Origin: Lepidodermella squamata
Lineage: Eukaryota; Animalia; Gastrotricha
Direction: 5' to 3'
Assembly (NCBI GenBank): GCA_047495785.1
Contig: JBLDXI010000007.1
Location: forward strand, 2,728,001-2,792,000
Length of the DNA: 64,000 nucleotides
This document shows positions 1-40,529 of this stretch, piece after piece. How positions within the stretch are numbered: the stretch's first letter is position 1; every line of letters begins with the position of its first letter. The notes under the pieces were generated by a model, which did no database searches, had not been told where the DNA came from, and saw nothing but the letters and a program-made list of their open reading frames with translations. The position numbers and the translations under genes were made by a program.

Positions 1-1674
1 TGAAATCCGTTGAATTGCTACAAGCGAAAAGCCCTTACAAACCGAAAATGGGTGATTTCGTGCGGAAGGTAGTCAAATCTAAGGAAGACGGCTCTATCCA
101 TCGAATCTTATCGGATTTTCGAAACAGACGGAGCGAAGAGCCATCGCCGGCCTACACGGAAACCACAAGACTTACTCTGCTTCAGAAAATTTTGCAATCG
201 GCAGCGAAGCTCAAGACGTTGCAACAAAACGAGACTTTGAAGAATAAGCGCAAGCTTTACCGGCCGGGCATGGGGGCTTTTATCAAAAACGTTCTCAAGG
301 CCGATAGAAGTGGATTACTATCGCGAATCAGATCAGGTTTTGCTGATTCGAGTCAGCATTCAATAACAAAGCAGTTCAGTTTCAACCATGATTCATTAAC
401 CGAGCGAAGCAGTGCACCGCTTGATTCTCGCTTCGGGAAAGTTCAACTCTTGGTTACTGCTGCAGATGAAGATGAAGATGAAGAGTACAAAACTGCATTT
501 ATGGTGGCAGCCGAACAGGGAAATATTGATATGGTACGGTTTTTCGTCAACAATGGAGCTGATGTTAATGTGAGGAATGAATTCAATGAAACACCTATCA
601 TTCTTGCTGCTGAGAACGGGCGCACTCATGTCGTCGATTATTTGCATTCAAAAGGTGGGAGATTCATTTTACTGTTATAATTTTTGCTGACTTTTCATTT
701 TAGGAGCTGATGTTAATGCAAAGGATGATTTTGGTTTCACAGCCATAGCTTGTGCAGCGAAAGGTGGCTACTTCAACATTGTTCGATTTCTAGTGGATAA
801 CGGAGCTAATGTAAACCCACTGGATCGTGACGGTGTGACACCCTTAATGTGGGCTGTTCAAAACTGTCATGGCGACATCGTTGAATTTCTGATTGAAAAC
901 GGCGCATCGATCAATGATTCAGACCGCAACAGATGGACAAGTTTGAGCTATGCTGCAGCTTTCTCCAAGCCGCAGATTCTTCGTTACTTACTAGCAAAAG
1001 GAGCGAAAGTTGATGCCAGAAACAAAGATGGATCAACGCCGTTGATAATCACGGCGGGTCGCGCAGTTTGCAGGGATGAAGCTGCGGAAATTACCAAGTT
1101 ATTGCTAGCACGTGGTGCTGATATTGCGGCAATGAACTTGAGTGGACTAAATGCACTGATGAATGCCGCAGCTAACGGAAATACGCCGGTGTATCGCATC
1201 CTGGTGCAGGCAGGGCTTGGTATTGTCAACGTGAACTTAGCGAGTAAAGACGGCGAAACAGCACTGATGAAGGCAGCTAAATTTGGATGCGTCGCAATAG
1301 TGAAAAACTTGATCGCTCACGGAGCGGACGTAAACTTGACTGACAATGAAGGCAGGTCTGCACTTATGGTAGCTGCGGAGTACGGATATAGCGACGTGAT
1401 GTGGCAACTCCTTGCGAGCGGAGCGTTCGTCAACGCTCGCGATTCCGTCAGTGGCTCGACTGCGTTGATATCAGCTTCGAAAAACGGATCGCTGGCGTCA
1501 GCTAAGCTGCTCGTAAATTACGGCGCAGATGTTGAAGAGAAGGATGACCAAGGCTATGACGCTATTACTCTGGCTGGTTTGAACGGTCATTCAAATTTAC
1601 AACGCTTTCTGAACGAAAAAGCTGTCAAGAGCTCAGCTCGATTTAGCCCACCAAATGTCGGCCGAGCGTTTTAA
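1..1674 (+). CDS. Ankyrin-repeat protein (5' end probably outside the window); exons ~1-654 and 704-1674
   Basis: About 11 canonical ANK repeats (TPLMWAVQNCHGDIVEFLIENGA, TALMKAAKFG...GADVN). The GT..AG intron 655-703 joins HSK-G-ADVNAKDDFGFTA in frame. The frame is open to the window edge. Confidence 0.9.
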
Positions 1675-12300: not shown

Positions 12301-15300
12301 CAAGTAACTTGTGCTCTTCATCTGATATTTTTGATATTTTTAGCTTGGCTACCACCGATGTACAAAGACTTGTCCGAGAAATCGCTTCGTCGCTCGCAAC
12401 AAGTGGCGGACAAGGTCGTAGCAGACACCGTTGAAGCGTTACTCGGCCTATTTCTAACAACCTGCGGCCCGCAATGCGCCCTGAAATTCCTCCAAAACTT
12501 CGGCCTCGAATTCCGAGACATGCCAAAATTGGACAATTCACCCGAATCAGACTTCAGCACGTGGGCGCCGTTGATGAACCTTGAATTGATTGAAAACGAA
12601 GAAATCGAAGCTAAATGGGTTGAATTACGACTCGACGATGTTGAAGCGAAACTCGGCTATCATTTCAAGCACAAACACCTGTTGATTCAAGCTTTTTGCC
12701 ACCGATCGGCTAGTTACGGCCAGTTTCAATCCTACGAACGCCTCGAAGTTCTGGGCGATGCTTTGATCGATTACCTAGTCACGGCGTGTCTATTCTCGAA
12801 ATCAGCCAAATTCAACCCCGGAATTCTCACCACGGTTCGAATGGCTGTTGTGAATAACGACGTTTTGGGCGCGATTTGTGTCCTGAATAATTTCCACCAG
12901 CACATCAACGCTGCGCCGTCTGAACACTCGGCCATCAGTGCTTTTGTCAATGAATTTACGAGTGAGACGATGAATCGCGAGGTGAAGGCCTGTCCGTTTC
13001 TGAATTGCGGCTCGTGGGGCGATTCTGTTGAAGTCCCGAAGGTGTTGGGCGATGTGTTCGAGGCAGTTGCTGGCGCTGTTTTCGTCGACTGTGGCCTGAA
13101 TTTGGACACTTTCTGGGCCGCAATTCATCCTCTTCTTGAAAGTACAATTGGTAAGCCAACAAGTTTTGCGTTTTTCTTCATTTTTCTGTGCTTGCAACTA
13201 ATCATCGGCGCCTGACTAAAGGTGTTTAAGGAGTTTCCTTTTACCTATCCATTTTGGGCCCGAATTCGGCCCGTCTGTGGCCGGATAATGCCACTTTACC
13301 ATTCCGCGCTCTACAATGTGCCTGTGTGCAACGTTTACTGCAAATTCAACAAAGTTCATCAAATTTCGCTTCGCTGCACACGTTCCGGCAGAGATACTTT
13401 TCACGTCGTTATTCAACTCCTTCTTAATTGTATCCACCACCTCGTAGGATCTGCCTACTCTGTTGGTTATTGCCACCATCTTCTCTTTTTCTTCTGGTGA
13501 AAAAGGGTATAACGAGCTTTCGGAGAGGTCTCTGCGTTGGGTACTGGGGCCGAAATAATGGGTAATGATGTCGAACAGTTTTTAGAGACCTCTGAATTCG
13601 ATGACAGCGTTTTAGGGGAATGCTAGACACCTGCCCCGCTGTGGCATTCGACCAAGATCCTGTCGTTAAGTCAAAGCTATACAGATAGCTTTGCTTCATG
13701 TTATATCTTACCGACAATGATTTTCAGAAAATAGCTGATTAAACGCACAAGTGGCAATGAACTTTGTATTCAAGCGTTCAATCGTTCTTCTGTCAGGTTC
13801 TTGGCCCAACTCAAATTCGAGTTCAGCTAGGTCAAACTGGGACAAAATGAGATTTTTCAGTTGGGTTGGGGGGTTGTCCGAAATTTGGTCGGCCTTGAGA
13901 CATCCGCCGAACTATATCAAGGAAAAGTAAGGCTTTTTACAGCAAAAGATGGGACAATGCTTTTGGGTAAAGTCGTTTAAACTCAATTCGGGTTCCTCTC
14001 CAATCCTTAATTTTATCCGTAGGATATGAGTACGAACACGTTATACCGGCAACATTAGCGCCGGCCTTCTCCGCTGCCGATCTTGAGGTAAACGGCTTGT
14101 TTGTAGGCACCTTATTGTCTATGGTCAGGTTGGATGATTTGATCGTCTCGACTTCGTGCCGCATGAAACAGCGAGTAATGACCCCATGTTCTGTTCTAAT
14201 AATGTAGTCGCCATAGTCGCCGATCCGCGAGACGCTCCCAGTAGGCGTTGCGGCTCTGTTTGGTTCCGTTCTTCCTTTGTGATCGGTACTGGTACCTGGG
14301 TACCGACCACCAGCGCGGGGTATTTGAGTTTCAAGGCAGTCAGCATTCGATCGGCTTGTTTGTTCAGGCTAGTAGAAGCAGTAGCCCGAACTTCGGACTG
14401 CTTTTGTTGATAGTAGCATAGATCACACTCGTCTCTCGCCTGTTGCATTTCTTACATGGATTTATGAGAGCCAAACTGTTGTTTGAAGCGTAGGGGGGCG
14501 AGCTGGAGAAGTTGTAAGTCGGAATTTGAACGTGATTCGACCAGCTTGCCAGGGGGACATTGGACCTTCTAAAGTTCTTTTCAAACGTAGATTTCATGAA
14601 GTAACATTTTGCAACGAAATGTAAAAGGCATTCGAACATCGGAAGGTCATCGTCATCAGATAGTTGATTTTCTTGCTCTGCATATCAGCGATGGACTCAG
14701 CAATGTCGGGCAATACCGAGTCGACAGGTAGATCTTCGACTTCATCCGTCTCAGGTCCGCAGTCGCTGACTTCTGGTCCCAAGGTCGAGTCTTCAAGATG
14801 GTGCTCAATCTCAGCCAAGTCGATGAGTACATGACCATTAGGGTTGACGTAGTAGCCGATGCGATTTTCGTCATTTGTAAATTGAGCTGTGAGTTTAAAT
14901 GGCAAATTGAACTTGCTTTCTGTGGGTGGAGCTCAGTATTACGCGTGCGTGATATTGACAAGTATAGCGCGTGCCGGCGATGGGTGCGTCAACATTCAGG
15001 AGTCAGTTCTCGGGCACTTGTCTTCTATCAACGCAATTTTGGTGTCAACTTCAAAATGCGGATTTTTGCCCGTTTCCCGGAAGAAAGTCGCGCAACCGTT
15101 TGATACCTGTTGTAGTCGCTTGTGTTGTAGAAAGATCGGCTAGTTTTTGCAAATTAGCTTGACGACCTGCTAGAAAATCACGGACCTGTTGGAAAGCGTT
15201 TGTCTGTGGAAAAAAATTAGCTTTCAGACTAATGAAACTACCTTAGGAATGACAGCTGGTTGAACAGACTAAGCGTGGACTGATCAGTCACTGTAGCCGA

Positions 15301-15726: not shown

Positions 15727-16506
15727 ATCTGTGATGTGAAACTGGAAAAAACGCAAAAAGACTGAAAAATGTGCAATTTTCAAAATTTTTATTATTCAAG
15801 CTGTTCTTGCCACAGAAAAAAATAGTCATACGATAATTAAAATATTATTATACAAAAGATTGCTGCAAATCAGTATGCTTGCCGAATTGATATAACGATT
15901 GTTGCGCTTTCTGATTATATTTATATTCGCCATATATATTCAAGTGAATGATTGCCAAATTTTGTTTTCTACCCCGAGTTGGTTGACTGCTGCAATAAAA
16001 AGTACCGGTTTTGGAACGTGGTTGAGTTCCTCTTTGTTGTTTCGCGAGTTACTTGATACCGGGGTCGGTTAATTAGCGGTATGGCGGCAAACAGCGGCAC
16101 TTATTGTGATGCCGTCTCTCGATAAACACGCGACACATACGGCCTCGTGTGAGTATTCACAGTTGTGCGCGCGTGAATCGGATTTCGCGCGGCAAGTTTG
16201 GACACGCATCAACACCATCTCGAAGCAGTGAATCATAATGAAAATTGCATAATCGTGCATGTCGTGATGTTTTTTATTGCTTGAAAAATATAATACATCA
16301 TCTACTCGAGTGCGCGAGTCGAGTGGCACCAGACTAATGCTAATGTGTGATGACGAAACAGCCAGAGACAAGTCGTCAACTGGGTGCGGCCTGGGGTGGT
16401 CGCGTTCTCTGACCTGGCAGCACCTGACAAGAACATCTTGATTGCACTTAGCCAGGTGCCACTACTTTTTATTATCTATAGAGTAAACAAACGAATACTC
16501 GTACGG

Positions 16507-19500
16507 ATGACTCACCAGAGCGCGGCCGTTTTAATTAAAGCGGCCTTATTAATAGCCTCCGCTTCCGTGAGCGCCGCTCAACAGGTGGCGGATCAAAGGC
16601 TCGTTGAAGCAATATGGAGTGGAGATTACGCAACCGTAGCGCAGCGGCTCGATACGGACGCGGATGCGGAAATGATAGACCCGATAACGAACTCGAGCCT
16701 GCTGTTCCTAGCCGTAAAAAACCATCGTGTCACAATTGCCCAACTGCTGATTCGATACGGAGCGGACTTTACTGCCCAGGACAAAACGGGCAACACTCCT
16801 CTTCACTACGCTGCTACGCTAGGGAATTTCCCTATGGTCGAGCTTTTAATCGAAAATGGAGCTGACCCGAACGCTTTGAATCCGAAAGATTGCAACCGCT
16901 CAGTTTTGCATGCCTGCTTTTCTCTGAATGTGGCAAATCGTTGTAACTCATATATAGCCCGGGTGCTTATCTCAGCTGGAGCGGATCCTTTTGTTAAAGA
17001 TTGCAACGGAACGACCTTGAACCAGTTGGCTAGCGATAACCCGAACAATGAATTCGTGTATGTCTATAACGAGCAGGAAAATCGAACAGCAAATTTCACG
17101 CCTGCAACCAGCAGCACCGCGCCAGATCTCTACCAAAGAGTGGTAAGGGCTGTTAGGCGGAATGACACCGATGCCTTGATTGGTTACATCGAAGAGAACA
17201 ACGCTGATACGGAATCTGAGTCTGGCCGGACACATTTAACCGCTTTATTTTACGCAGTTTTCATGAATGCTACTGAAATCGCGAAGATATTGCTCTTCCA
17301 TGGCGCCGATCCATACCGAACTGACGAGGCTGGAAACTCTCCGTTTTATTATGCGACTAGAATGGGTTACTACGAGATGACCAGGTTGCTCTTAAAATAC
17401 GGCGCCGAACCCAGCTCGGTAAATAGAGTTGACTGCGACCGTACTCCTCTTATCAATTGCTTGCGACCTGGGGTGATACTTGAAAATAAATGCGACATCA
17501 ACATGTTGAAGCTTCTGCTGAGAAGTGGTGCTAATCCTGAAATGTACGACTGCACCGGCACATCTGCTAGCAAATTAGCCAAAAATTTGAATAATGTGCA
17601 AGCAATCTACGCTTTCGACCCGAATTCAATGGCGAACCCTCCAGTGATTGCTACGACAACGCTGGCACCAAGGAGGCGCTTGCGACAGCCATTGTTATCG
17701 AGTAACATGACTCTAGTCGGAAACTACTCATCCTCGAGAAATGCATCTATTAGTAGCAACACCACAGACGATATGATGTGGGAGTTAATTCCGGCGAACG
17801 AGTTCATTCCTGAGGATTTGTTCAATACTTTGAGGAACGGCGATCTTATTCAACTAAACAAGATACTTGAATCTGGTATTGACCCTGATACAATCGAAGC
17901 AACCAGTAACCGAACGGCTCTTCTATACGCGATTGATGGTCGTTACCCGAATCAAGCCGCAAGTGTTCGAGCTCTTCTAGCTTCTGGAGCGAATATCAAC
18001 CGAACATATGACGGTTCTTTAACGGCTCTTCACGCCGCTGTAGTTCTAGGGAACGCTCCGTTGGTTCGACTTCTGCTGCAATATGGCGCTGATATCAACG
18101 CAATGACCGAAGATTGCGGCACAACTCCTCTGATGACCTGTGCTAGGCCATTTTCCCGAGGCACTGTTGGCGTTGAGAATCGCTGCAACGAAGTTATAAT
18201 TAAAATGTTGGTCCAGCTCGGCGCCGATGCTTCGACAAGGAATTGCCGGGGTCAAACTGCCTTAGCTTTGGCCAATCGTCATCCCAATCGCAAAGTGACT
18301 GAAGCTCTTGAGAAGTTAACTCCTATAGCTAGTGGACCCGTCATGCTAATTGGACAGAGTGCAACGCGGTCTTATATCGATATCTTACGGCAGCTATCGG
18401 TGTACGTCCCTCATCAGCTGGTTATCAGTGTCCTGCAGCCGAAAGGTGTGAGATTTGAATACGAAAGGGATGATCCTAGAGTCACGCGTCTTGTTATCGA
18501 ATATGGGATCGGCCAAGTTCGTGGTCAGCAAGACTACAGCTATCATTACGTTGTTCTTAATGCACCCGGTAAGTATGCCTATCAAAATTTAAGTTAGAAG
18601 TAATCGCAACCATTTACGCATCAGCCAATGCCTCGGATCCTTTTGTTTTCGTAAACAATGACTTGTCGCTCCAGCTTGATCAAACTATCTACTATCAAGT
18701 TGCAGCAACCTTAAACGACGGCCGCGTATTCGCTCATCGAAACTTGGCATGGACTTACACAGACGAGGCTTCTTTAAATGCAACAAACACAGGAAACGTA
18801 ATTTTGCTAAAATGTTGCTAAAATTTTTGAAATTATTGGCATTCACTTTAGGGTACCTTTGCACTGAGTGGAACTTTAGTAAATGCAACCATTATTTCTG
18901 GCAACTACACTGATGGGCCGATACCAGTTAATCTAACCATCCCAGTTAACGCCACCAGGGTGACGGTCACCAGAGTGTATCGAACTACAACCGCTCGATG
19001 GGCTAACGTTACCAGAACGCCAAGAAATAGAACAACAGCGAATCCTGATGAGATTTTACCCGATATTGCAAACCTCTACAATTTGACGATTGCTAACGTA
19101 TCGCTTAATACAACAGCGAGAGTAAGAACAACAACCCCTCGCAATTACAATGTAACGAGAAACAGGACATCGACGATAGATCCAGACAGCATTTTACCAG
19201 ATATTGCTGGCTTGTTTAACGAAACATCGAAGTCAAATTTTTCGACAGCAGTGGTGCGTACCACCATTGCTCCAACAACTCGTGGAAGACCGGCTAATTA
19301 CACGGGGCGAGCGAGCGGAACAACTCCTAGCATTGATTCGATTTTACCTGATTTATCCGGTCTGCTTAATCAATCTGGAGATTCTATGAATCGAACGATC
19401 AGGATAACAACAGCTGCCCCAACTACACGGGGTAGACCGGTGAATTACACGAGAAGGGCAGATGGCACCACCCCGAGCATTGATTCAATTTTGCCTGATA

Positions 19501-21385
19501 TCTCTAGTTTGTTCAATCAATCTGCTGACAATTCGTTCAGGGTAACTACAGTTGGGCCTACTACTCGGGGCAGGCCGGCCAACTATACAAGAAGGGCTGA
19601 TGGCACCACTCCAAGCATAGATTCGATCCTACCAGACATCGCAGGTCTATTCAACCAGTCTTCGGCCACTACTACAGTGGCGCGAACCACAAGAGGCCGA
19701 CCGGTCAACTACACAAGACGAGCCGATGGAACTACGCCCAGTATAGATTCCATTTTGCCCGACATATCTGGACTTTTCAACCAGACTGCTAGGCCCCCTG
19801 TTGTGACTACCATCGCAAGGACAACGAGAGGAAGACCTGATAACTTTACAAGGCGGGCCGATGGAACTACGCCAAGTATTGACTCAATCCTGCCCGATAT
19901 CTCAGGCCTTTTCAGCCAATCTAATCAAACTTCGATAAGAACCACTGTTGCCCCAACAACGAGAGGCAGGCCGGGCAATTACACCCGACGACCGGCAGGC
20001 TCAACGCCTAGTATCGATGAAATCTTGTCTGATATCAGCGGATTGTTTAACGCCTCTGGAAGTCTCGGGAACCGAACCACTTTAGCCCCGACTACACGAA
20101 GTAGATCTGCTAACTATACCAGACAACCCGCTGGTACAACTGTGAGCCATGGCTTGTTCAACCAAACTGTCGCGCGTACGACCCGTGGCAGGCCGGCTGG
20201 TTTTACCAGAAGACCTGAAGGGACGACAGTGAGTCCGGATGAGATACTCTCCGATATTGCCAGTATTTTTGATAATACCACTGAGCCGGTCTTGATTGAG
20301 CCTACTGAAGAGCCAACATCGGACATAGCTGGGGATCAAACCACAGCATCAACGCCAGACGAGGCTACGCCAGAAACTGGTGATCAAACAACTTTGAGGA
20401 CCCGAAGAACTACCGTTGACATGGACGAAATTCTTCCCGACCTTTCCAGCCTGTTCAATAACAACACAGGTAAGAATTTCTTTCCTAAGCAAAGGCTTAT
20501 CGCTGCTTTTTAGGTGAGGTAATGGGGGTCGATTTCTCTAAACTTTGGGTCTACCAGCAGTCGTGCGGACAGGCGAATTTAACTGAACTATCTGCCTTGC
20601 CTTGGAACGTGGTCTTAGACATCCGTTTCAATGACACTATGGATGAACCAGCGATTTGCGGCGGCACTTTGATTTCGAACCGAACTATGATCACATCTTA
20701 CCACTGCTTCGATCGCGGAGATGCTGAGGTGGTCAGGTGAAGTTTCCACCTTAATTATTTACTTTATTCTATTCTGGTTTTTATTAAGTATCAACGCAAC
20801 TTTGAATGATGGCAGCTTCCTTTCGGTAATTCTGGTCGACTCGCACCCCAACTACCTGTTTTCGAATCGGCAGTACGACTTGGCAATTCTTAAACTACCA
20901 GTCGAGCTTCCAGAGATCGAATTCGGCGAACAAGTTTCACCTGTATGCCTGCCTACCTTGGAGGATTGCTTAGCCGGGTTCATACCTGCCAAAGCGCCCG
21001 AGACCAATTCCAGCTGCGTTGCCTCCGGGTGGGGAAGAAGTAAGTCGATAATACTCTGAAAAAGCTAAGATAACATCTTCAATTTTCAGATGAAGCTGTC
21101 AGCACGATACCAGCTAATGTGTTGACTTATCAGCAATGCAACAGTTCTTATTTCGGACTGAGGGATACGACCACAGATACTGATATGTGCGTTTCATCTC
21201 CTGTCGACACCGACTGCCTGGGAGATGATGGTTCCGCAATCTTCTGCCCTGTAATATCTGGCGAAAACACCCGAATTATAGTTCAAGGATTCTCATCAGC
21301 CGGTGAGACGTGTTCAAGTGCTGAACAACCCTCCATCTACAGCCAGTTATGCCCTTCTATGCCGTGGCTTCTTTCAAAACTGTGA
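16507..21385 (+). CDS. Secreted ankyrin / CBM39-like / tandem-repeat / trypsin-homologue protein, paralogue 1 (~1540 aa); exons 16507-18568, 18625-18797, 18852-20469, 20514-20736, 20789-21039, 21090-21385
   Basis: Signal peptide MTHQSAAVLIKAALLIASASVSA, three ANK modules and a YVPHQLVISVLQPKGVRF...FVFVNND...YYQVAATLNDGRVF...WTY domain. About 10 repeats follow, then LPWNV...CGGTLIS...TSYHC...YDLAILKL...SPVCLP...GDDGS. The in-frame GT-AG junctions sum to 4623 nt. Confidence 0.85.
19000..20465 (+). repeat. Coding tandem repeat, ~10 copies of a ~40-45 aa unit (TTRGRPxNYTRRADGTTPSIDSILPDISGLFNQ)
   Basis: Seen directly in ORF 18960-20513. DNA copies differ mainly at synonymous positions. Confidence 0.93.
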
Positions 21386-22015
21386 ATGCACAATAAGAAC
21401 GCACCTGTAATTTACTAGCACTCGTTGATAATTTATGATGTAGATTCTAGAATTTCGTGATTATTTTTATTCGTTTTCAGTTCGATCACATTATTGATTG
21501 ATATTTTCGTACTAGTTCGTTTGTTTATAGATGCTGAGATTTTTTTCAAGAGCTGAGATCTTCATTAAAATTTGATCAGTTGACCTAAACCAAGGGGTTG
21601 TTGTTAATCTCACACCTGCAGGTAGTAGTAGTGATGCTGATGTTAATTTGAGTGGGCACGCATGTTCTACTATGATGAAGCGATAGCGCGCCGGTAAGAA
21701 GCGTCAAAATTATTATTATATTGTTAAAAAACGCGACCGTATATAATAGGGTGATACAATAATTATGATAAATGACGATCGAGCGAAAATGAGAGTGAGG
21801 GCAGTATAAATTTACAATGTGCGTATTAAATAAATAAATAAAATATACGCCTCAAAATGCTTTGAAGCCATACATCTGTTTGGCTCATGTTTTCTCGTCC
21901 ATTATTAATCCTTAACTTTTCAAGTCAAGTGGAGTAGCCTTTAATAGTACACGTGCGATCCTAGTAGCCAACAAAAATTGATCTAAATGTCTCAGCCTGT
22001 TATATAGTGTCGCAA

Positions 22016-25000
22016 ATGAATTTTAATTTATACCACGTTATCTTAATTTTACTTCATTTCGCAATCGAAACTCAGCAGCAGCAAGTTCAAAGGGTGATCG
22101 ATGCAATATGGAGTGGTGATTACTTAACCATCCAGCGCAATTTAGATTCTGGAATTGATCCGGAAGTTCAAGTATTCAACGGAACGTTGCTTACATTAGC
22201 AGTTAAGGCGCATAAAACAGCTATTGCTCAACTTTTGATACGTTATGGAGCCGATATCACAGTTGAAGATTTGCAAGGCTTTACACCTCTTCATTACGCC
22301 GTGGTCTTGGGAAATCTTCCAATGGTCGAAATGCTGGTGGAAAATGGCGCAGACCCTGCGGCACAATACGGCCATAAATTCTGCCAGGGTTCCGTTTTAC
22401 ACTCTTGTGTGAAGCCAAATGGCGGAAATCGCTGCAACGGATTGATTTTGGAGGCATTGATCACTGCTGGCGGCGATCTTAACGCTGAGGACTGCAAGGG
22501 ACGATCTGTTGCAGAGTATGCCATCGAGCATCCAGATCCGGAATTCGCAGATGCTAGCTTCATGTTCGAATCTTTCAGCGATAAGAAACCATCGGCTAGT
22601 CTCTCGAATTTTTCCGCGGAAATGCAGCTGGTTCAAGCAGTTCGGGCGGGCAACTTGACCAAAGTCTTGCAACTTTTGGATAAAGAGAAAGTGGATGTTG
22701 AAGCTGAAAATCCTTTTACTCATCTTTCAGCCTTATTCTACGCTGCGATCCGTAATCGGACTGCCATAGCCAAGGAATTGCTAGATCGAGGCGCAAATCT
22801 TTATCGAGTTGACGAAGCTTCAAATACACCGCTTTATTACTCTGTGAGATTAGGCTTCTTTGAAATGACGAAACTTCTCCTGGAAAATGGTGCTGACGCC
22901 ACTGCTGTAAACCGAATTGATTGTGGGAGATCCATTCTGATGACCTGCGCTCGATTTGGTGCCGTTTTGGACAACAACTGCAACTTCGCTATTGCGAAAT
23001 TGCTAATCGAGCAAGGGGCTAATCCTGAACTTTTTGACTGCAGCGGTATGACTGCGACAAAATTGGCGTACACCTCGGATAAAATCGATGTCTTGAGGGC
23101 TCTTGATCCGACTGCGGATGTTTCTGGGCCGAGCAAAGGAACGAGGCGACCTTTGAGAAAAGTCACTCTGCCAAACAAAATCGCCCTAGCGACTTCAACC
23201 GACATTACCATGAAATCTGGGGCTAGTGTGACAGCCAATTTTCTTAGCACTAACTTGACAACAATTAACGGGCCTACAACTACCAAGGCGTTAATAACTT
23301 CGAAGCCGACAACCACTAAGAGGATCACTACTACGATAACAACTACAACAACTTCAACAACAACTACTACTCCACCGTCAACTCGGGCCGGTCCCACCTT
23401 GCCGTTTTTCCTGGTTCGCAGGACGACTCGCAGAAACATCCCAGTAGCAGCACAAGAGGCGACAACTAGTACTACAACAACACCTGCGCTAGCTCCGTCA
23501 ACAGAAGTTACTCTCCTGGTAACTACTGAGCATCTAACGGATTCTGGGCTTAATACGACTCGAGATTTTCTAACAACAGAGTCCCACACGAAACTTGAGC
23601 CTAAAAGAGCATCCAGCAGCTCTATGGGGGGTTTGACTTCCCGGTCACGGAATCTTACTCAAGAAATTTTGAACGATTCGATTATTCCACCCAATGGACT
23701 GAAAATAAGGAGCCAACAAGAACCTATGAGGAAACCATTCAAAGCCTCCGAGTTATTTCAGAGCATTGAACTGGGGGATATCGTTCATTTGAGTGAAGTT
23801 GTTGATTCTGGAGACCTCGATCTTGAGACAACGACTCATAGCAGCACAAATTTGTCAGTCCTACTTTACGCACTAAATGGTCGCTATCCTAACCAAGCAG
23901 CTACGATAAGGATCTTACTCGAAACTGATCGGCAAAGTGTTCCGTTGAACACGAGTTTATTCTACGCTGTCAAACTGGGATCCACTCAGATATTGCAAAT
24001 GTTGCTGCAACATGGCGCTAATGTTAACGAAAACATCTGGGACGATTACAACTGTACTTGGACTCCTTTGCTAGCCTGTGTAAATGCAATAGGAAATTGC
24101 GACGAAGTCGGCATAAGGCTGCTAATGAGATTTGGCGCTGATGCCAGCGCTATGAATTGTAAGAATCAAACAGCTGCAGATCTTGTCCCGCTACGTCGTC
24201 CACCTGGTAATGATAAAGGAGGCCAAAATCGGATGCTGAAGGCTTTGAAACCTCAGTATGTCCCAGAGGTCACAACTCGTTATCCAGGGAAATACATATT
24301 CAATGCTCTGAAACAGTTATATAACTACGTACCTCGTGAGGTTGTATTTGAAGCGCTTGAGCCTCAAGGCCTTCGAATAGAGTACGCCAGAGACGACAGC
24401 CGAATTTCCGAAGTTTACGTCGTCCTAGGTAATGACACAGCTATTGATTACCTCGACATTATGAGCAACGCTACGTATTACCAATTGATGACTCCTGAGG
24501 ACGATCCATTCTCGCCGTTTACATATATCGATTTGGATAAAACACTCGTTGAAGGGCAGGTTGTTCACTACCAAATAGCGACTATTTTCGCTGATGGCCG
24601 AAAGTTTGCGCGAGGAAACCTAACTTGGACTTTCTTTGGATTCAACAATACAGGAATTTCGTCTGCCAATAGAACTCTTCTCAAAGCAACTGGACACTTG
24701 AGGGAGCGAATGGGATTCGATGGCAAGCCTAATGATTTATCCGTCCTTCAGTGTGGTCATATCGACCCAAGTTACTATCAGAGAATGGCAACAAATGACA
24801 CATTGGATACTCCGCTGCCATGGAATGTAAATTAAAAGCGTGTATTACTTTGGGTGTACTAATCATTAATCATTTCCATGACAGGTTAAGCTAATGATTC
24901 AGCATAGGACTCAAGGAAGATTCAACTGCAGCGCAGTTTTGGTATCTCCAACAAAGTTACTGGCGTCTATGGCTTGTTTTATTGACGACTCCATGTCTCA

Positions 25001-25645
25001 ACTTCCAAAGCAAGGATTCACCTCGTAAGATAGTAATTGTATCCCGGAATTAACTGAATTTTCCTGTTTCAATAGGATCAAAGGATTACTATCAGACAGC
25101 AGAATAATAGATCTCAGATTTGCAGAGATAAATTATGATTACAGAATGGTAATCCTTGAGCAAGTCGATACGAGAGCTGATCCGATGGCTGGACCTCACA
25201 ACTACCATCTTGTCTCTCCAATTTGTCTACCGAACCTTCAAGAATGCGAAATTCTCGAGAGTTCCCCTTCTGAGGGTGATAGCGAAAGTCTGAACTGTTT
25301 CGTCTCAAGCTATAATCAAGATTTAGTCTTCACTGGTAACAAAATTCCTAAAATATGTTAACAGATACACTTTTTATACTAATTACAGAGGTCATTCCGT
25401 CAGCAAATCAGGATGACGAGGGAACATTTTGCCGCGGAGTTTTCGATGGAATGGCCAGCAGTGGTTTGACTTGCTCTTTTGACGAAGTTCAGCCTTCCGA
25501 ACAAGGAGTCCGATTGGCTATGGACCAACTTCAAGACATCGGGTCTGCAATATCGACATGTCTAAAACGTCAGATTTCATCGAAATCTCAAACAACTTAT
25601 CATCCTATATGCCCCGCGTTATCTTGGCTTTTGAGCTTTATATAA
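22016..25645 (+). CDS. Secreted ankyrin / Thr-rich / CBM39-like / degenerate trypsin-homologue protein, paralogue 2; exons ~22016-24826, 24885-25024, ~25077-25335, ~25389-25645
   Basis: Hydrophobic N-terminus and the same three ANK modules (AIWSGDY, AVRAGN, SIELGD...YPNQAA). A poly-Thr linker precedes YVPREVVFEALEPQGLRIEYARDD, then LPWN|VKL...CSAVLVS...VSPICLP...ICPALSWL. Confidence 0.82.
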
Positions 25646-26313
25646 TTAGAAGTACACGCGTTTATTTTAGAGCACCACCTCAAAGAAATGTATGGTTCTG
25701 GTTATTTTGTACGCCCGTGTGAGTCTTCAGCATGCTATTCTCATTTTTTTCAATGTCCCTGTACCACAAGATGAAATAATTTTCACGGTAATAAAATAAG
25801 TGTTGCATTACGTGCTTCCTGATTTTCTAATATAAAAAGTCGCTATATCGTGCGTGAAAAGAAACCTGCGCTGCGAAAAGACGCGACACATAATTCACGC
25901 GTATTACCTATGCATAATTTAGGCCTAATAATTTCACGTCGCAGCAGTGAAGCTTGTGACAACAATTTCTTAGCGAAAAATCTTATCATCATTTTTTGTT
26001 CTCCATCATATCTCGCTCGTAATTGTAATTTGCGTGGTGTTTAGATGCAACGCGCGCTACTGTTTATCAACTCGTGCCGCGCTCTCACAGGTGACAAGTC
26101 ACAGCACCGAGCTCGGGGGGTTAATGCTAGATAAATATCTAGATGCTTCATCGCAAATAATTATCCGCAACCTGGCATGCAAAAATTATGATATTATTGC
26201 TATACGCAACACATAGCGCTCACGATAAGATAAACTCACACACGCGCGCGGATGTAACTACTCTACCATAACCAGGTTTTACAGCTGCCAACCCCGCTTA
26301 GGATCCTACCATC

Positions 26314-29300
26314 ATGCTTATCAATGGTATAATCATCCTAACTATTCTCAAAATCGCAGTGGCAGAGCAGATTTTTCCTGGTGAAAAATTGGTCGAAGCT
26401 ATTTGGATTGGTGACTACACTACTATATTAAAATCGTTGGAAAATGGAATTGCACCAGACTTGGATCTTATCTACAACCACACGCTGCTCTCTCATGCTG
26501 TTCAAAATCATCAAACCGCGATTTCTCGACTTTTCATCCGTTACGGAGCCGATGTTAATGCAAAGGATTTCAGAGGGCTAACCCTTTTACACCACGCAAG
26601 TGAGCTAGGTAACCTTCATATGGTGGAATTACTCATTGAAAACGGGGCAGATCCAGCCAGATTTTACGACGAAGGGAACTGCAGAAGAACGGCTCTTCAC
26701 TCTTGTGTTCTTCATAACCCTGGAAATCGATGTCATGGCTTGATTTTACAGGCTTTAATCGCCGCTGGTGGCGAAGTGAATGCACTGAATTGCGACAATA
26801 AATCAGTGTTGGACTTGGCATTGGAAAATCCGAATAAAGAATTCTTGGAGTCTGTCAACATCGAACAGCTTAAATTCATGATCGATCACGATATTCCAAT
26901 CGAATTGCATCTCATTCATGCTGTTAGAAACGGAAATTTTAGTGAAGTTGTTCGACTTTTGGATGTTGAGAATGCCGATGCCGAGTCTGAGGAGTGGAAT
27001 ACCCATCTTTCACCGCTGTTCTACGCGATAATCGGCAATCACACTGATATTGCGCAGCTTTTATTAGAAAGAGGCGCTAACCCATTACGAAGAGATGAAG
27101 GCGGAAATTCTTACCTGGGTTATGCAGTAAGATTTGGTTATTCACAGATGGTCCAACTCCTGCTAGAGCATGGTGCTGATGCCAATGCTATCAACATAAT
27201 GGATTGTGATCGGCCAGTTTTGATGGAATGCTCTCGGCCCGGTTCTATTTTACCACGTAACTGCGGCTTCGAGATCGCAGAACTGCTAATGGAACATGGA
27301 GCTAACCCTAAATCTCAAGATTGCACAGGCGCTCAATCGATCCCGGAATTCGGCCAGAAGCTTGGTAACTCTGATTTCATTCAAGTTGTTGAATCGAACC
27401 CTGGTAATAGAAGGACAGCGAGAACGTTGAAGGCTAATCGAGAAACTTCGGAATCGGAAAATCGTAATTCGGGGAGACAAATACCCAAGAATTTCCTTCT
27501 GATCCGGAAAACGAGTCCTGTGACGACGACTACAACTATGGTTCCGCCTGTTGCCATTAATGGGACAAAGCGTGTACCTTTGGTTGATCTGTTGTATCAA
27601 TACTTTTTGAGGCAGAATGGGAGTGCGAATTCAAGCGCTCTGCTTCTGACAACTCTTCCTGCTACAACGACCACTTCCACTCCCCTCAGAAGACAGGCAA
27701 ACTTCGCCCCGAAACATAGTGCTGAAGAATTGTTCGAAAGTATCCGATCTGGAGACATCAAAGACTTGATTTCAATACTTAAATCGAATGAGCTAGACTA
27801 TGCATACCTAATCGATCCCGAGACCAATTTAACCACACTTCCGATGTTGCTAAGCGATCACTATCCAAACCAAGCTGCCAGTTTGAGAATCATCCTCCAG
27901 TACGTGCCTGGTTTGAATCTAAATGGATCTCTTCATATGACTATGCATCTTGGCTCAGCTCCTGTCGTTCATCTTCTTCTTCAAAACGGAGCGGATCCGA
28001 ATGAATTTCAAGCCGATAAGAATGATTGCTCTGTCACGCCTTTGATGCTTTGCGTAATCAGTGTTGCAACTTGCGATGAAGTCATCATCCGGCTATTGAT
28101 GAAATACGGCGCGAATGCTAAAACGCTTCGAAACTGCAGGGGACAGAGTGCTGTAGATCTTGCCAACGTTCGCCGGTCTCTTGGTCACTTGGATACTGAA
28201 GAATACAGCCAAGTTTTGCAGGCTCTGAATGCAACTCTCATGGAATACGCAACTCCGAGGCTGCCCTACACCACTAATGTAGTCCATGCGCTTCAACAGC
28301 TGTATGAATACACGCCGCAAGATCTGGTTATCGAAGTTCTGAGGCCTAGAGGTCTCCGTTTTCAGTACGAGAGGGACGATCCTCGACTCGATCATATTTT
28401 GATTGAATTACGCGACGGCGGTCCCGATCACCACTACATTGCAGTTTACAGCGCGGACTCCAGCAATCCTCACGCGCCATTTGTCTTTGTAAATAATGAC
28501 ATTGAAGTTCAGGAAGGCGATTCTTTTTCTTACCAATTAGCGGCAGTCTTCAAAGATGGACGTAAATTTGCCAAGGGTCCGATGACTTGGAGTTACCAAA
28601 CTAGGAGTGCTGTTAGTTTCTTACCGCTATCCTCGCGAACCGAAGTTCCGAGTACCGCCACTTCACCGGTTAAGAAGTTGGAATGTGGATACATTGCTCC
28701 AGAATACAGCTCGGAGCAGCTCTCTTCTCAAGTTTTGCCGAAACCCTTGCCATGGACTGTAGGTTTTCTTCCTTTCGATAGACCAACGCTCAAACATTTA
28801 TTTTCCTCAGGTCAAATTAGAAACCAATTTTACGAGCTCGAAATCGGAAAGTTGTAGCGCGGTGCTGGTTGGCTCTAATACTTTTCTCGCCTCAGCCTAC
28901 TGCTTTTTCGAGCCCTATACAAATCTAGTCAGGAAATTCAATTCGTGAGTTTTCTTCTCGATGCCAACTCTTAACGCAAATAGATTTCTTTTAGAATCAA
29001 AGCCACGCTGAATGATGATAGAGTTTTCTCAGTCAGTCTCGTCAACATAAGTTTTGAAGCCAACATCGCCGTCCTCAAGCCTATGAATGACGACCGCAGA
29101 TCAGTATTTGGATTATTTAATTACGGCCATGTATCTCCTGTTTGCTTGCCAACCCGCGAAGAATGTGATTCATTAGAACTGCTGAAAAATGGAGTGAATT
29201 CAACGACTGCGATCGAGTGCTACATTTCGAGCTACAACCAAAGCAAGATCATGAGAGGTAAGATCGAATTTTAGCAATCACTTCGGGCTTGAAATCTCTT

Positions 29301-29575
29301 AACGCATTTTAGAGCTATCTATCTCTTGGCTCGATTCGAACGACGAAACCTTTTGCGAATCGCTGAGAGGTGATATCTTGAGTAACTCCTTGGTATGCAC
29401 TATCCAGAAACCTGACAAGACAAGCAAGCAGAAAATGGAGAGCTCGAAGCGCCAGTTATTTGACAAAATCTCAACTCGCATCAACAAATGTCTCGGGAAA
29501 ACTTCGGCTTCTACGGAACGGACTTTCAACCCAATCTGCCCTGCATTATCCTGGCTAAGCCAAATTGTAACGTAG
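26314..29575 (+). CDS. Secreted ankyrin / CBM39-like / degenerate trypsin-homologue protein, paralogue 3; exons ~26314-28758, 28811-28944, ~28995-29257, ~29332-29575
   Basis: Signal peptide MLINGIIILTILKIAVA and the same ANK modules. YTPQDLVIEVLRPRGLRFQYERDD...VQEGDSFSYQLAAVFKDGRKF is followed by LPWT|VKL...CSAVLVG...VSPVCLP...ICPALSWL. Confidence 0.82.
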
Positions 29576-29749
29576 AATTCTCAAAGGAATTAGTCGCATA
29601 CTGCCATATTTATTTACCAATTTATCTTGCATTTTAAACCCGAGTGATTTCTAAGACAAATTAAGAACAGCGTCAACAAATAAAAAAGCGATCCTATGAA
29701 GATCAAATTTTGCCACAAGCCAAGCTTCGCTGGTTTCAATGAAACTTCT

Positions 29750-30306
29750 TTTTTTAGATCTTCCGCAGATCACAAGTTAGAAAATTCTTCTGGCGGAGTT
29801 TCCGAGTTTCTCGTTTAACGTTCTATCAGAGTACAATGGCTGGATCAATGTGATGCAGTTGGGTGTAGATCGCCCGTGGATACGTCGAAGGTAGGGTGAT
29901 GGCAGGCTTCTCTCAGCTAATAAATTGACATTTTATATGCTATAAGCTACAAAATTCTCCCTTGATGTTGCTGTCTCCCGCGACAATTCAAACATTTTAA
30001 GTGGAAACGGTTTCAAACTAAAAATGGCAAGCGCTCATAAGAGCTACGATAAACCTTTCGATCGGCTGTGCTACATCTCAACCGGCTAATAATTCGTCGA
30101 TTTACTACATGAATGAAAATGATGCGATTTCATGCTTGACGGTTTACTACGGGCCGTTTACTATACAGCAAGTGATGCATGTGAAAGTGGCTTGTAGAAT
30201 TAAGCCAACTAAGAAGTCGGCTGCTCAGTGTGGCAGCACTACGGCCAGCGCCTCAATGTTGCAAACAGGAAATGCAGTTTTTGTCTTGCTTTGCATTCTT
30301 TGCTAA
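29750..30306 (+). pseudogene. Decayed copy of the lectin/LamG-like domain found in the channel gene at 37398
   Basis: MNENDAISCLTVYYGPFTIQQVMHVKVACR aligns by eye to ISENDAIACFTVHNGSIDASGMEQLQADCR at ~38800. The upstream frames are interrupted by stops. Confidence 0.55.
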
Positions 30307-37397: not shown

Positions 37398-40300
37398 ATG
37401 TACGTAGCCTTTTTCACTTTTTTCTTGGTAATGCAAGCTGATCTATCAGTTGGGAGCGAGTTGTATTTTAAAGCCAATCAGTGCCTGGCGTTTTGGGCTA
37501 TGGATGATGAGCATAAACTAAGAGATATCGCAACCAACAAAGATCCAGTGCTCTCGAATGGTGTACTTCGAACAGGACTGGTCGGGTATTTTGGCGGATT
37601 GTGCACTTCGTATATGTCATCCTCACGCAGTCTAAGTATCCTTGAGGCTAATTACGTTAACGCGATCGATACGTTCACGTTCTCGATGCTAGTGTTTATA
37701 TCTAAATCCGCGACTGGTGATGGTGGCCTTTTCGAACAGAAAACACGGAATGATGTTGCCAGCCCGTGTCGCCTTTGCGTTACTATAATTGCAGGGAATC
37801 CACCGAAACTGGAAATCCGAGTTGGCGATGATCAACCATTAAAATCGTATGACGTGATATCTGAGAAATGGATTCATGCGATTTTCACCTATGAGCCTAT
37901 TAACAAGATTGGCGTAAGACTCAGTTCCAAGGACTTTAACCTGACTGAAACTATAGACAGACCGTTGACGACCATTGCTAATGGGGAAACGCCATATCTC
38001 AAAGTCGGGCATGCAGTTGGCAAATCATTAAATTTGAACAATTCCATGTCCTGCTTTATGGCTTATACAGTTATCATAAGCAGTGCGGACCTTCCCCAAA
38101 TTCTGGATTCTTGTCGAAAATATCTTGCTAATGGATGCTCGACGTCAACTTCACCAAAAACAGTTGCATCAAGCCCCAAAATGACGACAACCGCTCAACA
38201 AACACCTACGCGCGCACCTGCAACTTCGACGGCTTCAGCTACCACGGCTTTGGCTAATCTCGACCCTATCATATTCTGGCCGATGGATGGTACGATTGGA
38301 AGACCACAACCTATGGGAATGAATGGTAGTGTTCAAACAGGATTTCTTGGTCCTTTTGGTGAGCAATGCACTTCTCTGACCCAAGAACCTGGTCGTTTGG
38401 AATATCTTCTGAAGTTTGAAGATGTTGACCTGAAAAAGGATTTCACTGTATCGATGCACATTTATATCTCCTCGGCAACTAATTTCAACAGAGGCATCTT
38501 CGAAATGAGGCCTCAAGGTCATTCTGAAAATTGCCGGCTATGTGCAACTGTCGCTGAATCCCTGATAATCAGAGCTCTCCCGCAAGATTTCTTGAAAGAA
38601 GTGCAAATCGAAAAAGATATCTGGCTCTTTGTTGCATTCTCCTACTCAAACTCCTGGTTGAAATTTTATTCGGTTAGAAGTGGTGGCCCCGTTGTTGAGA
38701 ATCTAAATGTCAGTCTTAATGTTAACACCGACAAAACCTTCATTATTTACGTCGGGCGAACACGATTTACTAAGACTACAAATGATGATGCCTTCATTAG
38801 CGAAAATGATGCCATTGCTTGTTTCACTGTGCATAATGGTTCCATCGACGCTTCAGGAATGGAACAACTTCAAGCTGATTGTAGAGCCTCGTTGAAACCT
38901 GGATGCGAGGTTACGACGACAACACCTTTGACGTCTCAGTCAACATCGGTATCCACAGCTAGCTCGAAAGAGCTCTCCACATCGGCACAAACATCTTTTT
39001 CAAGCGCCACCTCAACTGGGGCAGTTAATCTGGAGATTACCAAATCCAACATAGAAAATTACTCGTCGACCGCTATTGTCGCTGAGTCAGCTGAAACCTC
39101 AGCGATTACTCAGACTCCCGAATCTACAACAGATTGGAAGTCATCGTCCCCACAATCATCCATCAGCGGGAGCAATATTTCGCCAACATCGACTCTCCCT
39201 TTTCCTCAAAATCTTGACAACGCAGCTGATTTTACACCGAACTATCAGATCACGGCAGCTAATCTTGCTAGCGGTAACTTGACGGAAGCTGAAATCCGTA
39301 AGTAATTCTTTTGCGCTAAAACCACCCTTTTTACAGAGACTTCGAAGCAAACGGAATGTATCCATCTTTTGTTTGTAGATGCAGCCCTGATAAATGGACC
39401 ACCTACTGACCCTGAACTGCTGCTACCTTTCAGCAACGTAACCGCAAGTAACATGTCTGATGAGTGCAAAGATCTCGCCCCGATCAACCGCAGCCCGCCT
39501 CTATTTGATGGCAACCCTCTGAGCGTAAATCTCCGCTTCAGCATCGACCGCCTTCTGGACGTAGATAGCGTCGCACAGACCATAAGTGTCTCTGGCCAAA
39601 TCTACGCAATTTGGTCGATCAAATCGTGCCCTATCATTATTGGACTTCGATCTTTCGGCCAGGCGAAAGCTGAACGAGTTTTACTGCCGGATCATAAGGA
39701 AATCTGGAATCCGCCTCTCGAGCTAAGCAATGCCGTCAGTGACCCTCTGATGACCAGCAACTATTTCGATCGACTTGAGCTATTCCCGATTCAAGTGAAC
39801 CGCTCAAGCCCGAAACTCGCTATCTATTTCTACTGGAAGAAAATCGGAATTTTCTCTTCGTCCTGCTCCCTCAATCTCGCTGATTTCCCGGTCGATACTC
39901 AAAAATGTGAATTTCAATTTTCGTTCCTCGAGTCGACCAACATTGTTGGTATCGAAAATGCATCCATCTTTATAAGTTCCGACTATCTTGGGGCTTCGTC
40001 AGATAAAGCTGAGTGGATTATTGTTAGGAGTGGCTTGAAGTTTAGTACCATCCCACTTGGATCTGGCGAGTTAGGAAGTGCTGTATCGTTTGTTGTAACG
40101 GTTAGAAGGCGGCCTGAATTTTACTTTTTCAATCTTTTGGGGCCCTGTTTTGTGCTCTTCGTCCTGTCAGCTGCTACTTTCTCCATCCCGCCCCAGCATA
40201 GTGACCGGGCGTGTTTCAATGTTTATCTGGTATTGGCGCTATCAGTCACTCTGGTCCAGGTCAACCAATACCTACCGATAACGGCTCAGTCTGTGTTTTT

Positions 40301-40529
40301 GCTGAACTTCATCCAAGGACTGGCCGCAATTTGCATTTTTGCAACGGTCCACTCCCTAGTTATGCTGTGGCTGATGAGCGAAAAGGCACATCTGGCTAAC
40401 AAAGCCGTAGCACGGGGCCGATTCACCTTTGCGGCATGCGCCGACCTGTGCGGCTTCGCGTTGTTCCTCATTGCCTTTATCGCACTAACCGGCTATGCGG
40501 CTGATAAGATACGCAACAGCTATGCATAA
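37398..40529 (+). CDS. Cys-loop (pentameric) ligand-gated ion channel subunit with two N-terminal concanavalin/LamG-like domains and Ser/Thr-rich linkers, ~1030 aa; exons 37398-39297 and 39337-40529
   Basis: Signal peptide and two related ~210-aa beta domains (FWAMD...FTFSMLVFI...WIHAIFTY; FWPMD...FTVSMHIYI...WLFVAFSY). The 39-nt intron joins in frame to IDRLLDVD...IWNPPL, the Cys loop CSLNLADFPVDTQKC, RRRPEFY and four TM helices. Confidence 0.83.

What the first reader, a model, noticed from the sequence alone, without database searches (positions are those of the whole stretch)
28303..28600. CBM39/GNBP-like beta-glucan-binding domain not explained by ANK or trypsin annotation
Seen: YEYTPQDLVIEVLRPRGLRFQYERDD...PFVFVNNDIEVQEGDSFSYQLAAVFKDGRKFAKGPMTWSY, with equivalents at ~18403-18763 and ~24319-24640. 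Known: the betaGRP N-terminal domain follows roughly Y-x-VP...E...P-[KR]-GLR...W-x-F-x-D...L-x-x-GD-x-I-x-[YF]W...DG...W. Inference: a divergent CBM39-like Ig fold. The middle, presumed glucan-contacting segment differs among paralogues, hinting at different ligand specificities.
Basis: partly seen in the sequence, partly recalled or inferred. Interest (0 to 1): 0.78.

Follow-up and report, generated by a model that had tools for sequence, protein, structure and literature searches.

The report
Divergent glucan-receptor-like domain in secreted proteins
Three neighbouring animal genes each carry a roughly 105-residue domain that folds like the insect fungal-glucan sensor domain (CBM39) but lacks its key sugar-contact residues and sits in an undescribed secreted protein between ankyrin repeats and a dead protease.

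Summary
The quoted peptide is at 28303-28600 inside an 847-codon ORF. Paralogous copies lie at 24317-24658 and at 18394-18568 plus 18625-18760, the latter split by a 56-nt GT-AG intron.

It is not a canonical member. In the only sequence alignment obtained, to Plodia betaGRP-N, Trp76 falls opposite an invariant Gln and Arg87 opposite Ala. The domain is internal, not followed by a GH16-like domain, and below the Pfam threshold.

The proteins read: signal peptide, ankyrin block, Thr-rich linker, ankyrin block, this domain, linker, non-catalytic trypsin-like domain. No orthologue was found in two very large protein collections or in metagenome contigs. Ligand binding is inferred, not shown.

The scan holds an unchecked note of a similar gene on another piece of this genome.

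The parts
28300..28611 (+). P3 copy of the CBM39-like beta-sandwich domain (the finding itself)
24317..24658 (+). P2 copy of the domain, with a longer middle segment
18394..18568 (+). P1 copy, first exon piece (N-terminal half of the domain)
   Evidence: Pfam CBM39 E 0.16, 12.2 bits on this piece alone. tblastn to P3 gives 59% identity.
18569..18624 (+). 56-nt GT..AG intron splitting the P1 domain in its variable middle. Inferred; no RNA was laid here.
   Evidence: Sequence: GTAAGT...CAG, and the frame is restored, continuing as ..NASDPFVFVNND.
18625..18760 (+). P1 copy, second exon piece (C-terminal half of the domain)
   Evidence: tblastn to P3 gives 41% identity.
26314..28758 (+). P3 first exon: hydrophobic N-terminus (probable signal peptide), ankyrin block, Thr-rich linker, second ankyrin block, the domain, and a linker ending in ..CG..PW
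   Evidence: ORF. Ankyrin families E 1e-36. N-terminal hydropathy, 10 N-x-S/T sequons and 13 Cys. 5' splice site GTAGGT at 28759.
28811..29575 (+). P3 downstream exons (about 28811-28944, 28995-29257 and 29313-29575): a degenerate trypsin-like region lacking the catalytic His (..SAYCF..). Splice sites are inferred.
   Evidence: Stop-free pieces and paralogy with the trypsin-like exons of P1. Sequence with GT..AG sites. No Pfam hit exon by exon.
22016..24832 (+). P2 first exon (first ATG at 22016), with the same layout as P3 and a long Thr-rich stretch
   Evidence: Pfam ankyrin families plus CBM39 at residues 777-876. STP-rich windows.
24882..25642 (+). P2 trypsin-like exons (..SMACF.. with no His). 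The intron 25025-25075 is seen as a spliced joint in run X2.
   Evidence: Joint 25024->25076, GT..AG, skips 51.
16507..18568 (+). P1 first exon: probable signal peptide, two ankyrin blocks and the first half of the domain
   Evidence: Pfam ankyrin families E 5e-48. Hydropathy, 13 sequons and 12 Cys.
18852..20510 (+). P1 exon of about a dozen Thr/Arg-rich peptide repeats (..TTRGRPxNYTRRADGTTPSIDSILPDISGLFNQS..), a mucin-like stalk between the domain and the protease-like part
   Evidence: Translation. No credible Pfam family. No DNA-level tandem repeat.
20489..21382 (+). P1 trypsin-like exons. His and Asp motifs are present (TSYHCF, DLAILKL), but the catalytic Ser position reads GDDGSA.
   Evidence: Each of the three stop-free pieces passes the Pfam Trypsin gathering score (25.2, 30.1 and 30.7 bits; cut-off 20.6). 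Motifs read.

Best explanation
The stretch encodes a roughly 105-residue extracellular beta-sandwich. [quoted passage not shown] It is present once in each of three tandem paralogous genes. The products read: signal peptide, ankyrin block, O-glycosylation-type Thr-rich linker, ankyrin block, this domain, linker (a long mucin-like stalk in P1), and a non-catalytic trypsin-like domain. The fold-determining positions of CBM39 are kept: the P-[KRQ]-G-[LV]-R turn, the D-D turn, G-[DQ], the [KAN]-D-G turn and the C-terminal Trp. The exposed aromatic triad of the sugar-binding sheet is not kept. Tyr-Trp-Tyr is replaced by [Tyr/His/Ser]-Gln-Ala, and the middle loop region differs in each paralogue. 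The most likely role is a recognition module that tethers these secreted scaffold proteins to a polymeric, probably carbohydrate, ligand. This would make them a fused sensor-plus-protease-homologue, analogous in logic to betaGRP recruiting a modular protease, but through a remodelled binding face. What is shown: the sequence, the paralogy, the domain order, the predicted fold and its nearest structural neighbours, and transcript-like coverage. What is inferred: secretion, homology rather than convergence, and any ligand binding.
Against: No sequence score is significant on its own. Pfam scores are below the 25-bit cut-off, and the PDB hit has E 0.78. The models are of moderate confidence (pLDDT 71-74; two of the five P3 models scored 44-52) and rest on a 4-row alignment. 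AlphaFold may also have recalled the fold from short motifs. Language-model features point only to generic fn3/Ig-like clusters. Trp76 and Arg87 of the lepidopteran site are not conserved in the HMMER alignment. Trp76 is called crucial in PMC6272582. Listing Arg87 among the site residues rests on my recollection of the primary paper, which could not be read. Beta-1,3-glucan binding by the known mode is therefore doubtful. No orthologue is available to test conservation of a binding face.
Confidence: 0.6

Rival explanations
1. The domain has the same CBM39-type fold, but carbohydrate binding has been lost. It acts as a rigid spacer or a protein-protein interaction module between the ankyrin scaffold and the protease-like domain.
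For: The aromatic triad and Arg87 positions are replaced. The residues conserved among paralogues coincide mainly with turns and core positions of the fold. The middle loops are poorly conserved and of low model confidence. Ankyrin repeats and protease homologues are typically protein-binding modules (established knowledge).
Against: An invariant exposed Gln-x-Ala on the equivalent strand in all three copies suggests that face is still constrained (inference). Its nearest non-CBM39 structural neighbours are also glucan or starch binders: CBM56, CBM31 and amylase N-domains.
Confidence: 0.22
2. It is a canonical beta-1,3-glucan pattern-recognition domain that binds triple-helical glucan in the same way as lepidopteran betaGRP-N. 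The paralogues are then tuned to different glucans.
For: The fold and end-to-end alignment to betaGRP-N. The middle segment, which is the region where Asp49 sits in Plodia betaGRP-N (chain index 51), varies between copies. Asp49 is named as a glucan-interacting residue for the Bombyx structure in PMC7915573.
Against: Trp76, described as crucial and contacting two glucan chains (PMC6272582), aligns with an invariant Gln. Arg87 aligns with Ala. Scores are below the family threshold.
Confidence: 0.12
3. It is an ordinary fn3 or other Ig-like module unrelated to CBM39, and the similarity is convergence within a very common beta-sandwich architecture.
Against: No Pfam fn3 hit appears even at E 10. 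All CBM39 entries outrank all fn3 entries for both models, by about 2.5-3 Z units and with lower rmsd and near-complete coverage. Five ordered sequence motifs coincide with betaGRP-N.
Confidence: 0.06

Closest known systems
betaGRP/GNBP3 N-terminal domain (CAZy CBM39, Pfam PF15886; PDB 3AQX, 3AQY, 3AQZ, 2KHA, 2RQE, 3IE4)
   Same: It has about 100 residues and an Ig-like beta-sandwich fold, and CBM39 is the best structural match by every method used. The ordered motifs Y-x-x-P, P-K-G-L-R, D-D, G-D, K-D-G and the C-terminal W coincide. Both sit in extracellular proteins.
   Different: It is below the Pfam threshold. The surface triad Tyr-Trp-Tyr is replaced by [Y/H/S]-Gln-Ala, and Arg87 by Ala. 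It is internal rather than N-terminal, and is followed by a protease homologue rather than a GH16-like domain. The middle loop region is unrelated in sequence. Glucan binding is untested.
CBM56 (bacterial beta-1,3-glucan-binding module; PDB 5T7A, 6A6C, 5H9X/5H9Y)
Fibronectin type III domains
   Different: There is no Pfam fn3 hit. They rank consistently below all CBM39 structures, with higher rmsd.
Arthropod serine protease homologues and glucan-triggered protease systems (masquerade-like SPHs, proPO-activating cofactors; horseshoe crab Factor G; betaGRP plus modular protease HP14/MSP)
   Same: A recognition module is coupled to an S1-protease-type domain in a secreted protein. Factor G joins a glucan-binding subunit to a protease subunit (PMC7915573). 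The remaining comparisons rest on established knowledge of these pathways.
   Different: Here sensor-like and protease-like parts are in one chain. There is no clip domain, no R-IVGG-type activation site and no catalytic Ser (nor His in P2 and P3). Two extracellular ankyrin blocks are added. I know of no described protein with this architecture, and a full-text search for CBM39 together with ankyrin found only an unrelated review.

Membership tests
CBM39 / Pfam PF15886 (betaGRP/GNBP N-terminal glucan-binding domain) | Score at or above the Pfam gathering threshold (25 bits) | tested here: not met
   18.6 bits (P2), 15.4 bits (P3) and 12.2 bits (P1 first exon piece). It is nevertheless the only non-ankyrin family reported.
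CBM39 / Pfam PF15886 | Ig-like beta-sandwich of about 100 residues that superposes on the solved betaGRP-N/GNBP3-N structures | tested here: met
CBM39 / Pfam PF15886 | Conserved family motifs in order (N-terminal Y..P, PKGLR, DD, GD, KDG, C-terminal W) | tested here: met
   HMMER alignment of the paralogue profile to Plodia betaGRP-N (3aqy_A) spans chain 3-99 with these positions aligned. The overall score is only 13.1 bits, E 0.78.
CBM39 / Pfam PF15886 | Glucan-contact residues of the solved complexes: Trp76 (crucial; aromatic triad Tyr-Trp-Tyr), Arg87 and Asp49 | tested here: not met
   Trp76 (chain index 78) aligns with an invariant Gln, Tyr78 with Ala and Arg87 (index 89) with Ala. Asp49 falls in the unalignable middle, so it is inconclusive. 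Residue roles: Trp76 and the triad from PMC6272582, Asp49 from PMC7915573. Arg87 is from my recollection of the primary paper, which could not be read. The local alignment is of low certainty.
CBM39 / Pfam PF15886 | Usual context: N-terminal position after the signal peptide, followed by a GH16-like domain or standing alone | tested here: not met
   The domain lies at residues about 663-766 of P3 exon 1, after two ankyrin blocks and before trypsin-like exons. Atlas CBM39 clusters show CBM39+GH16 or CBM39 alone.
CBM39 / Pfam PF15886 | [quoted passage not shown] | not testable with these tools
   This needs recombinant protein with curdlan or laminarin pull-down, ITC or a glycan array.
Fibronectin type III (PF00041) | Profile match and best structural neighbours | tested here: not met
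   There is no fn3 hit at E up to 10. fn3 structures rank below all CBM39 entries.
Catalytically active S1 (trypsin-like) protease, for the domain downstream | His-Asp-Ser triad and an activation cleavage site | tested here: not met
   The P1 exons pass the Pfam Trypsin threshold, but the Ser position reads GDDGSA. P2 and P3 read SMACF and SAYCF in place of the His motif and have no Pfam hit. No IVGG-type site follows the CG..PW linker. All of this was read by eye and exon by exon.

The most novel reading that the evidence does not exclude
These genes are a new, rapidly diversifying family of single-chain extracellular pattern-recognition receptors in a sparsely sampled animal lineage. In this reading, a CBM39-derived module whose binding face has been rebuilt ([Y/H/S]-Gln-Ala strand plus a paralogue-specific hypervariable loop) recognises different microbial polymers. 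It presents them on an extracellular ankyrin scaffold together with a dead protease that nucleates a downstream cascade.
Probability: 0.25. Interest if true: 0.8.

Novelty: new variant of a known kind. Interest (0 to 1): 0.6.

Why it matters
CBM39 is known as the fungal-glucan sensor of insect immunity, almost always N-terminal to a glucanase-like domain. Here the same fold appears with the canonical sugar platform replaced and a hypervariable middle. It is placed between extracellular ankyrin repeats, which are unusual in secreted animal proteins, and a dead protease, in tandemly duplicated genes with no detectable orthologues. If it binds a ligand, this would show how a recognition fold is re-used and re-tuned outside the classical GNBP architecture. 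It would also give an entry point to the innate immunity of an unstudied animal lineage. If it does not bind a ligand, it remains a clear example of a sub-threshold domain that only structure prediction can annotate.

Tried and rejected
1. Word-index protein search restricted to the domain (P3 residues 650-775): 75 candidates, none at E 0.01 or better.

2. Exhaustive HMMER search of 1.84 billion representatives with the 4-row domain profile: 16 hits at E 1e-3 or better. All were multi-stretch matches to long repetitive proteins. The eight scanned with Pfam were repeat-rich bacterial-type proteins (Big_2, fn3, DUF4116, type-IX-secretion and LPXTG tails). I judged them spurious. There was no GNBP and no orthologue.

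3. Whole first exon of P3 in the word search: 1365 generic ankyrin proteins. None of the 120 listed carries PF15886 or PF00089. The higher-coverage ENA hits are pure ankyrin proteins, and the one compared directly (P0017) has no domain match.

4. Metagenome contig scan. Alignment A1 matched 418 patterns, but none was confirmed.

5. PDB sequence search with the 2-row profile and with P2 alone: only chance-level hits (levansucrase, toxin A repeats) and no CBM39. Only the 4-row profile found 3aqy_A.

6. Protein-language-model look-alikes: generic fn3/Ig-like only.

7. Rfam scan of the window, to help place the organism: nothing.

8. Primary structural papers (PMC3190723, PMC3542770, PMC2781413) are not held. 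Residue roles were therefore taken from two reviews.

9. A profile-profile comparison against a real CBM39 alignment was not run, because no CBM39 sequences were available by reference and I did not type sequences in.

10. Spliced models were not joined. The P1 domain was used as two separate exon rows, and the trypsin-like parts were scanned exon by exon. In one search the two P1 rows were read column by column only to count identities.

11. A non-coding or chance-ORF reading was rejected: ORFs of 737-942 codons, three-fold paralogy and transcript-like coverage.

Full report
**What is there**

The window is animal DNA. It carries Dicer pieces, a pentameric ligand-gated channel, a SOCS-box gene, a USP36-like gene and a WW/PID gene. 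Introns are very short, at 50-56 nt.

It lies in an 847-codon ORF, 26314-28857. Two further + strand ORFs upstream, 16384-18597 and 22007-24835, end in the same kind of sequence. tblastn of the P3 domain against the window finds only these three places: P2 at 24305-24634, E 1e-23, and P1 in two pieces, E 5e-21.

The P1 copy is split by a 56-nt GTAAGT...CAG intron at 18569-18624 that restores the frame. I kept its two exon pieces as separate rows throughout and did not join them. In one search the two rows were read column by column only to count identities.

**Gene context**

Each gene starts with a hydrophobic N-terminus typical of a signal peptide. The first exons carry 10-18 N-x-S/T sequons and 12-13 cysteines. 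In P2 the Thr-rich linker between the two ankyrin blocks is a clear Ser/Thr/Pro-rich stretch (up to 80% over 30 residues); P3 has a short Thr run.

After the domain comes a linker ending in ..CG..PW. In P1 it is preceded by a 553-codon exon of mucin-like repeats. Exons of a trypsin-like domain follow.

- In P1 each of the three trypsin-like pieces passes the Pfam Trypsin threshold. The catalytic serine motif, however, reads GDDGSA.
- P2 and P3 read SMACF and SAYCF where the catalytic His motif should be, and no longer match Pfam.

These are therefore protease homologues, not enzymes. This reading is by eye, exon by exon.

Contigs of run X2 look like RNA. They cover the exons of P2 and P3, including both domains. 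They are absent from the intergenic 25773-26363, which the DNA run X1 covers. They carry a GT..AG joint 25024->25076 inside the P2 protease-like part. This is consistent with transcription. It does not show that all parts form one transcript.

**Is it CBM39-like? Sequence evidence**

Pfam CBM39 (PF15886) is the only non-ankyrin family reported for any of the three copies:

| Copy | E-value | Bits | Note |
|---|---|---|---|
| P2 | 0.0017 | 18.6 | covers profile positions 3-95 of 107 |
| P3 | 0.016 | 15.4 | |
| P1, first exon piece | 0.16 | 12.2 | |

All are below the 25-bit gathering score.

A profile of the paralogues has exactly one hit at E 10 or better among 177,635 PDB sequences. That hit is the Plodia interpunctella betaGRP N-terminal domain (3aqy_A/3aqz), E 0.78, 13.1 bits, aligned end to end (query 8-105, chain 3-99). 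Neither result is significant alone. Both point at the same family.

**Is it CBM39-like? Structure evidence**

Two AlphaFold2 models were made from the 4-row paralogue alignment, with no templates and no CBM39 sequence.

- P3: pLDDT 74.4, pTM 0.63, seven strands.
- P2: pLDDT 71.4, pTM 0.67.

The ESM-Atlas shape search returns three arthropod CBM39 clusters as its top rows, TM 0.74-0.77.

Three caveats apply. The models are of moderate confidence. The alignment behind them is shallow. Language-model features suggest only generic fn3/Ig-like neighbours.

**How far it is from canonical CBM39**

The HMMER alignment gives the Plodia sequence. Its numbering can be tied to the literature: chain index minus 2 puts the conserved Trp at position 76 and an Asp at 49, the numbers used in the reviews.

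Positions that look fold-determining are shared. These are Y..P at the start, P-K-G-L-R (here P-[KRQ]-G-[LV]-R), D-D, G-D, K-D-G and the C-terminal W.

The exposed triad of the strand I-Y-F-W-T-Y is different. PMC6272582 describes Tyr75-Trp77-Tyr79 in Drosophila, and Trp76 as crucial in the moths, contacting two laminarihexaose chains. Here the triad aligns with [Y/H/S]-x-Gln-x-Ala. The Gln and Ala are invariant in the three copies, and the alignment preserves the inside/outside alternation of the predicted strand (inference). Arg87, which I recall from the primary paper as part of the site, aligns with Ala. Asp49, named as a glucan-interacting residue in PMC7915573, falls in the region that cannot be aligned.

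That middle region is where the paralogues differ most. It has 12-32% identity, lengths of 22, 29 and 22 residues, and one invariant column of 35. The flanks have 41-54% identity and no gaps. It is also the least confident part of both models.

However, the solved complexes place the site on the convex sheet, with the long beta3-beta4 loop only stabilising it (PMC6272582, PMC3975366). The middle is at most part of the site.

**Relatives**

None were found.

- The domain-restricted word search gave nothing.
- The exhaustive profile search of 1.84 billion representatives gave only multi-stretch matches to long repetitive proteins, which I judged spurious. The eight I scanned with Pfam were repeat-rich bacterial-type proteins.
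- The whole first exon found only generic ankyrin proteins, none with CBM39 or Trypsin among the 120 listed.
- The metagenome contig scan confirmed nothing.

The organism itself seems absent from these collections. A conserved USP36-like ORF has one 71%-identical hit, on unnamed ENA metagenome contigs that share local gene order (WW/PID next to USP). The next hits are at 45-47%.

I could not name the organism, so I cannot say whether this is CBM39 outside arthropods. A full-text search found no paper linking CBM39 with ankyrin repeats other than an unrelated review. The scan's notebook lists an unchecked first-stage note of a secreted ankyrin-CBM39-mucin gene on another piece of this genome. 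The family may therefore be larger.

**Mechanism**

The explanation I commit to, at about 0.6, is a CBM39-derived recognition module in secreted scaffold proteins. The module tethers the ankyrin blocks and the dead protease to a polymeric, probably carbohydrate, ligand through a remodelled face. The dead protease would serve as adaptor or cofactor rather than enzyme.

This resembles three known arrangements: betaGRP recruiting a modular protease, Factor G, and microbe-binding protease homologues of arthropods. The Factor G comparison is supported by PMC7915573. The others rest on established knowledge. Here the parts are fused into one chain.

The rivals are:

- the same fold with lectin function lost, acting as a spacer or protein-binding module (0.22);
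- canonical triple-helix glucan binding (0.12);
- an unrelated fn3/Ig module (0.06).

Only binding assays and an experimental structure can separate the first three readings.

**Verdict**

The fold interpretation is supported. Membership of CBM39 in the strict sense is not established, because the threshold, the contact residues and the domain context were tested and not met.

This is a new variant of a known kind, in an architecture I could not find described.

Noticed in passing
window 18852-20510 (+): A single 553-codon exon of P1 encodes about a dozen imperfect peptide repeats, each roughly 35-40 residues (..TTRGRPxNYTRRADGTTPSIDSILPDISGLFNQS..). They are rich in Thr, Arg and N-x-T sequons. 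Tandem Repeats Finder sees no DNA-level repeat, and P2 and P3 lack this exon.
   Followed up: partly
window 16507-18300, 22016-24250 and 26314-28250 (+): The ankyrin repeats sit behind apparent signal peptides, with conserved cysteines and many N-glycosylation sequons. These would be extracellular ankyrin blocks, which are unusual for animal proteins.
   Followed up: partly
window 37398-40529 (+): A 635-codon ORF with no Pfam family lies directly upstream of an ORF with the ligand-binding and membrane domains of a neurotransmitter-gated channel. A first-stage note calls it a channel fused to lectin/LamG-like domains.
   Followed up: no
window 3828-13215 (+): A Dicer gene lies in several long exons: helicase C, dimerisation domain, platform and two RNase III regions.
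   Followed up: no
L001-L004 (ENA metagenome contigs); window 58271-63090 (-): The closest relative of the window's USP36-like gene (71% identity) lies on unnamed metagenome contigs with the same WW/PID-USP neighbourhood. There, a SOCS-box gene is on the other side compared with the window. A related animal therefore occurs in those environmental samples.
   Followed up: partly
window 15-1674 (+): Two further ankyrin-repeat ORFs lie at the window's start (Ank_2 E 3e-68 for 793-1671). I did not check whether they belong to the same secreted family.
   Followed up: no
window 24000-29900: The DNA run X1 includes contigs only 90-95% identical to the window, alongside contigs at 99% or more. Many substitutions and small indels cluster around 29270-29300. 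This suggests divergent haplotypes or a close strain.
   Followed up: no
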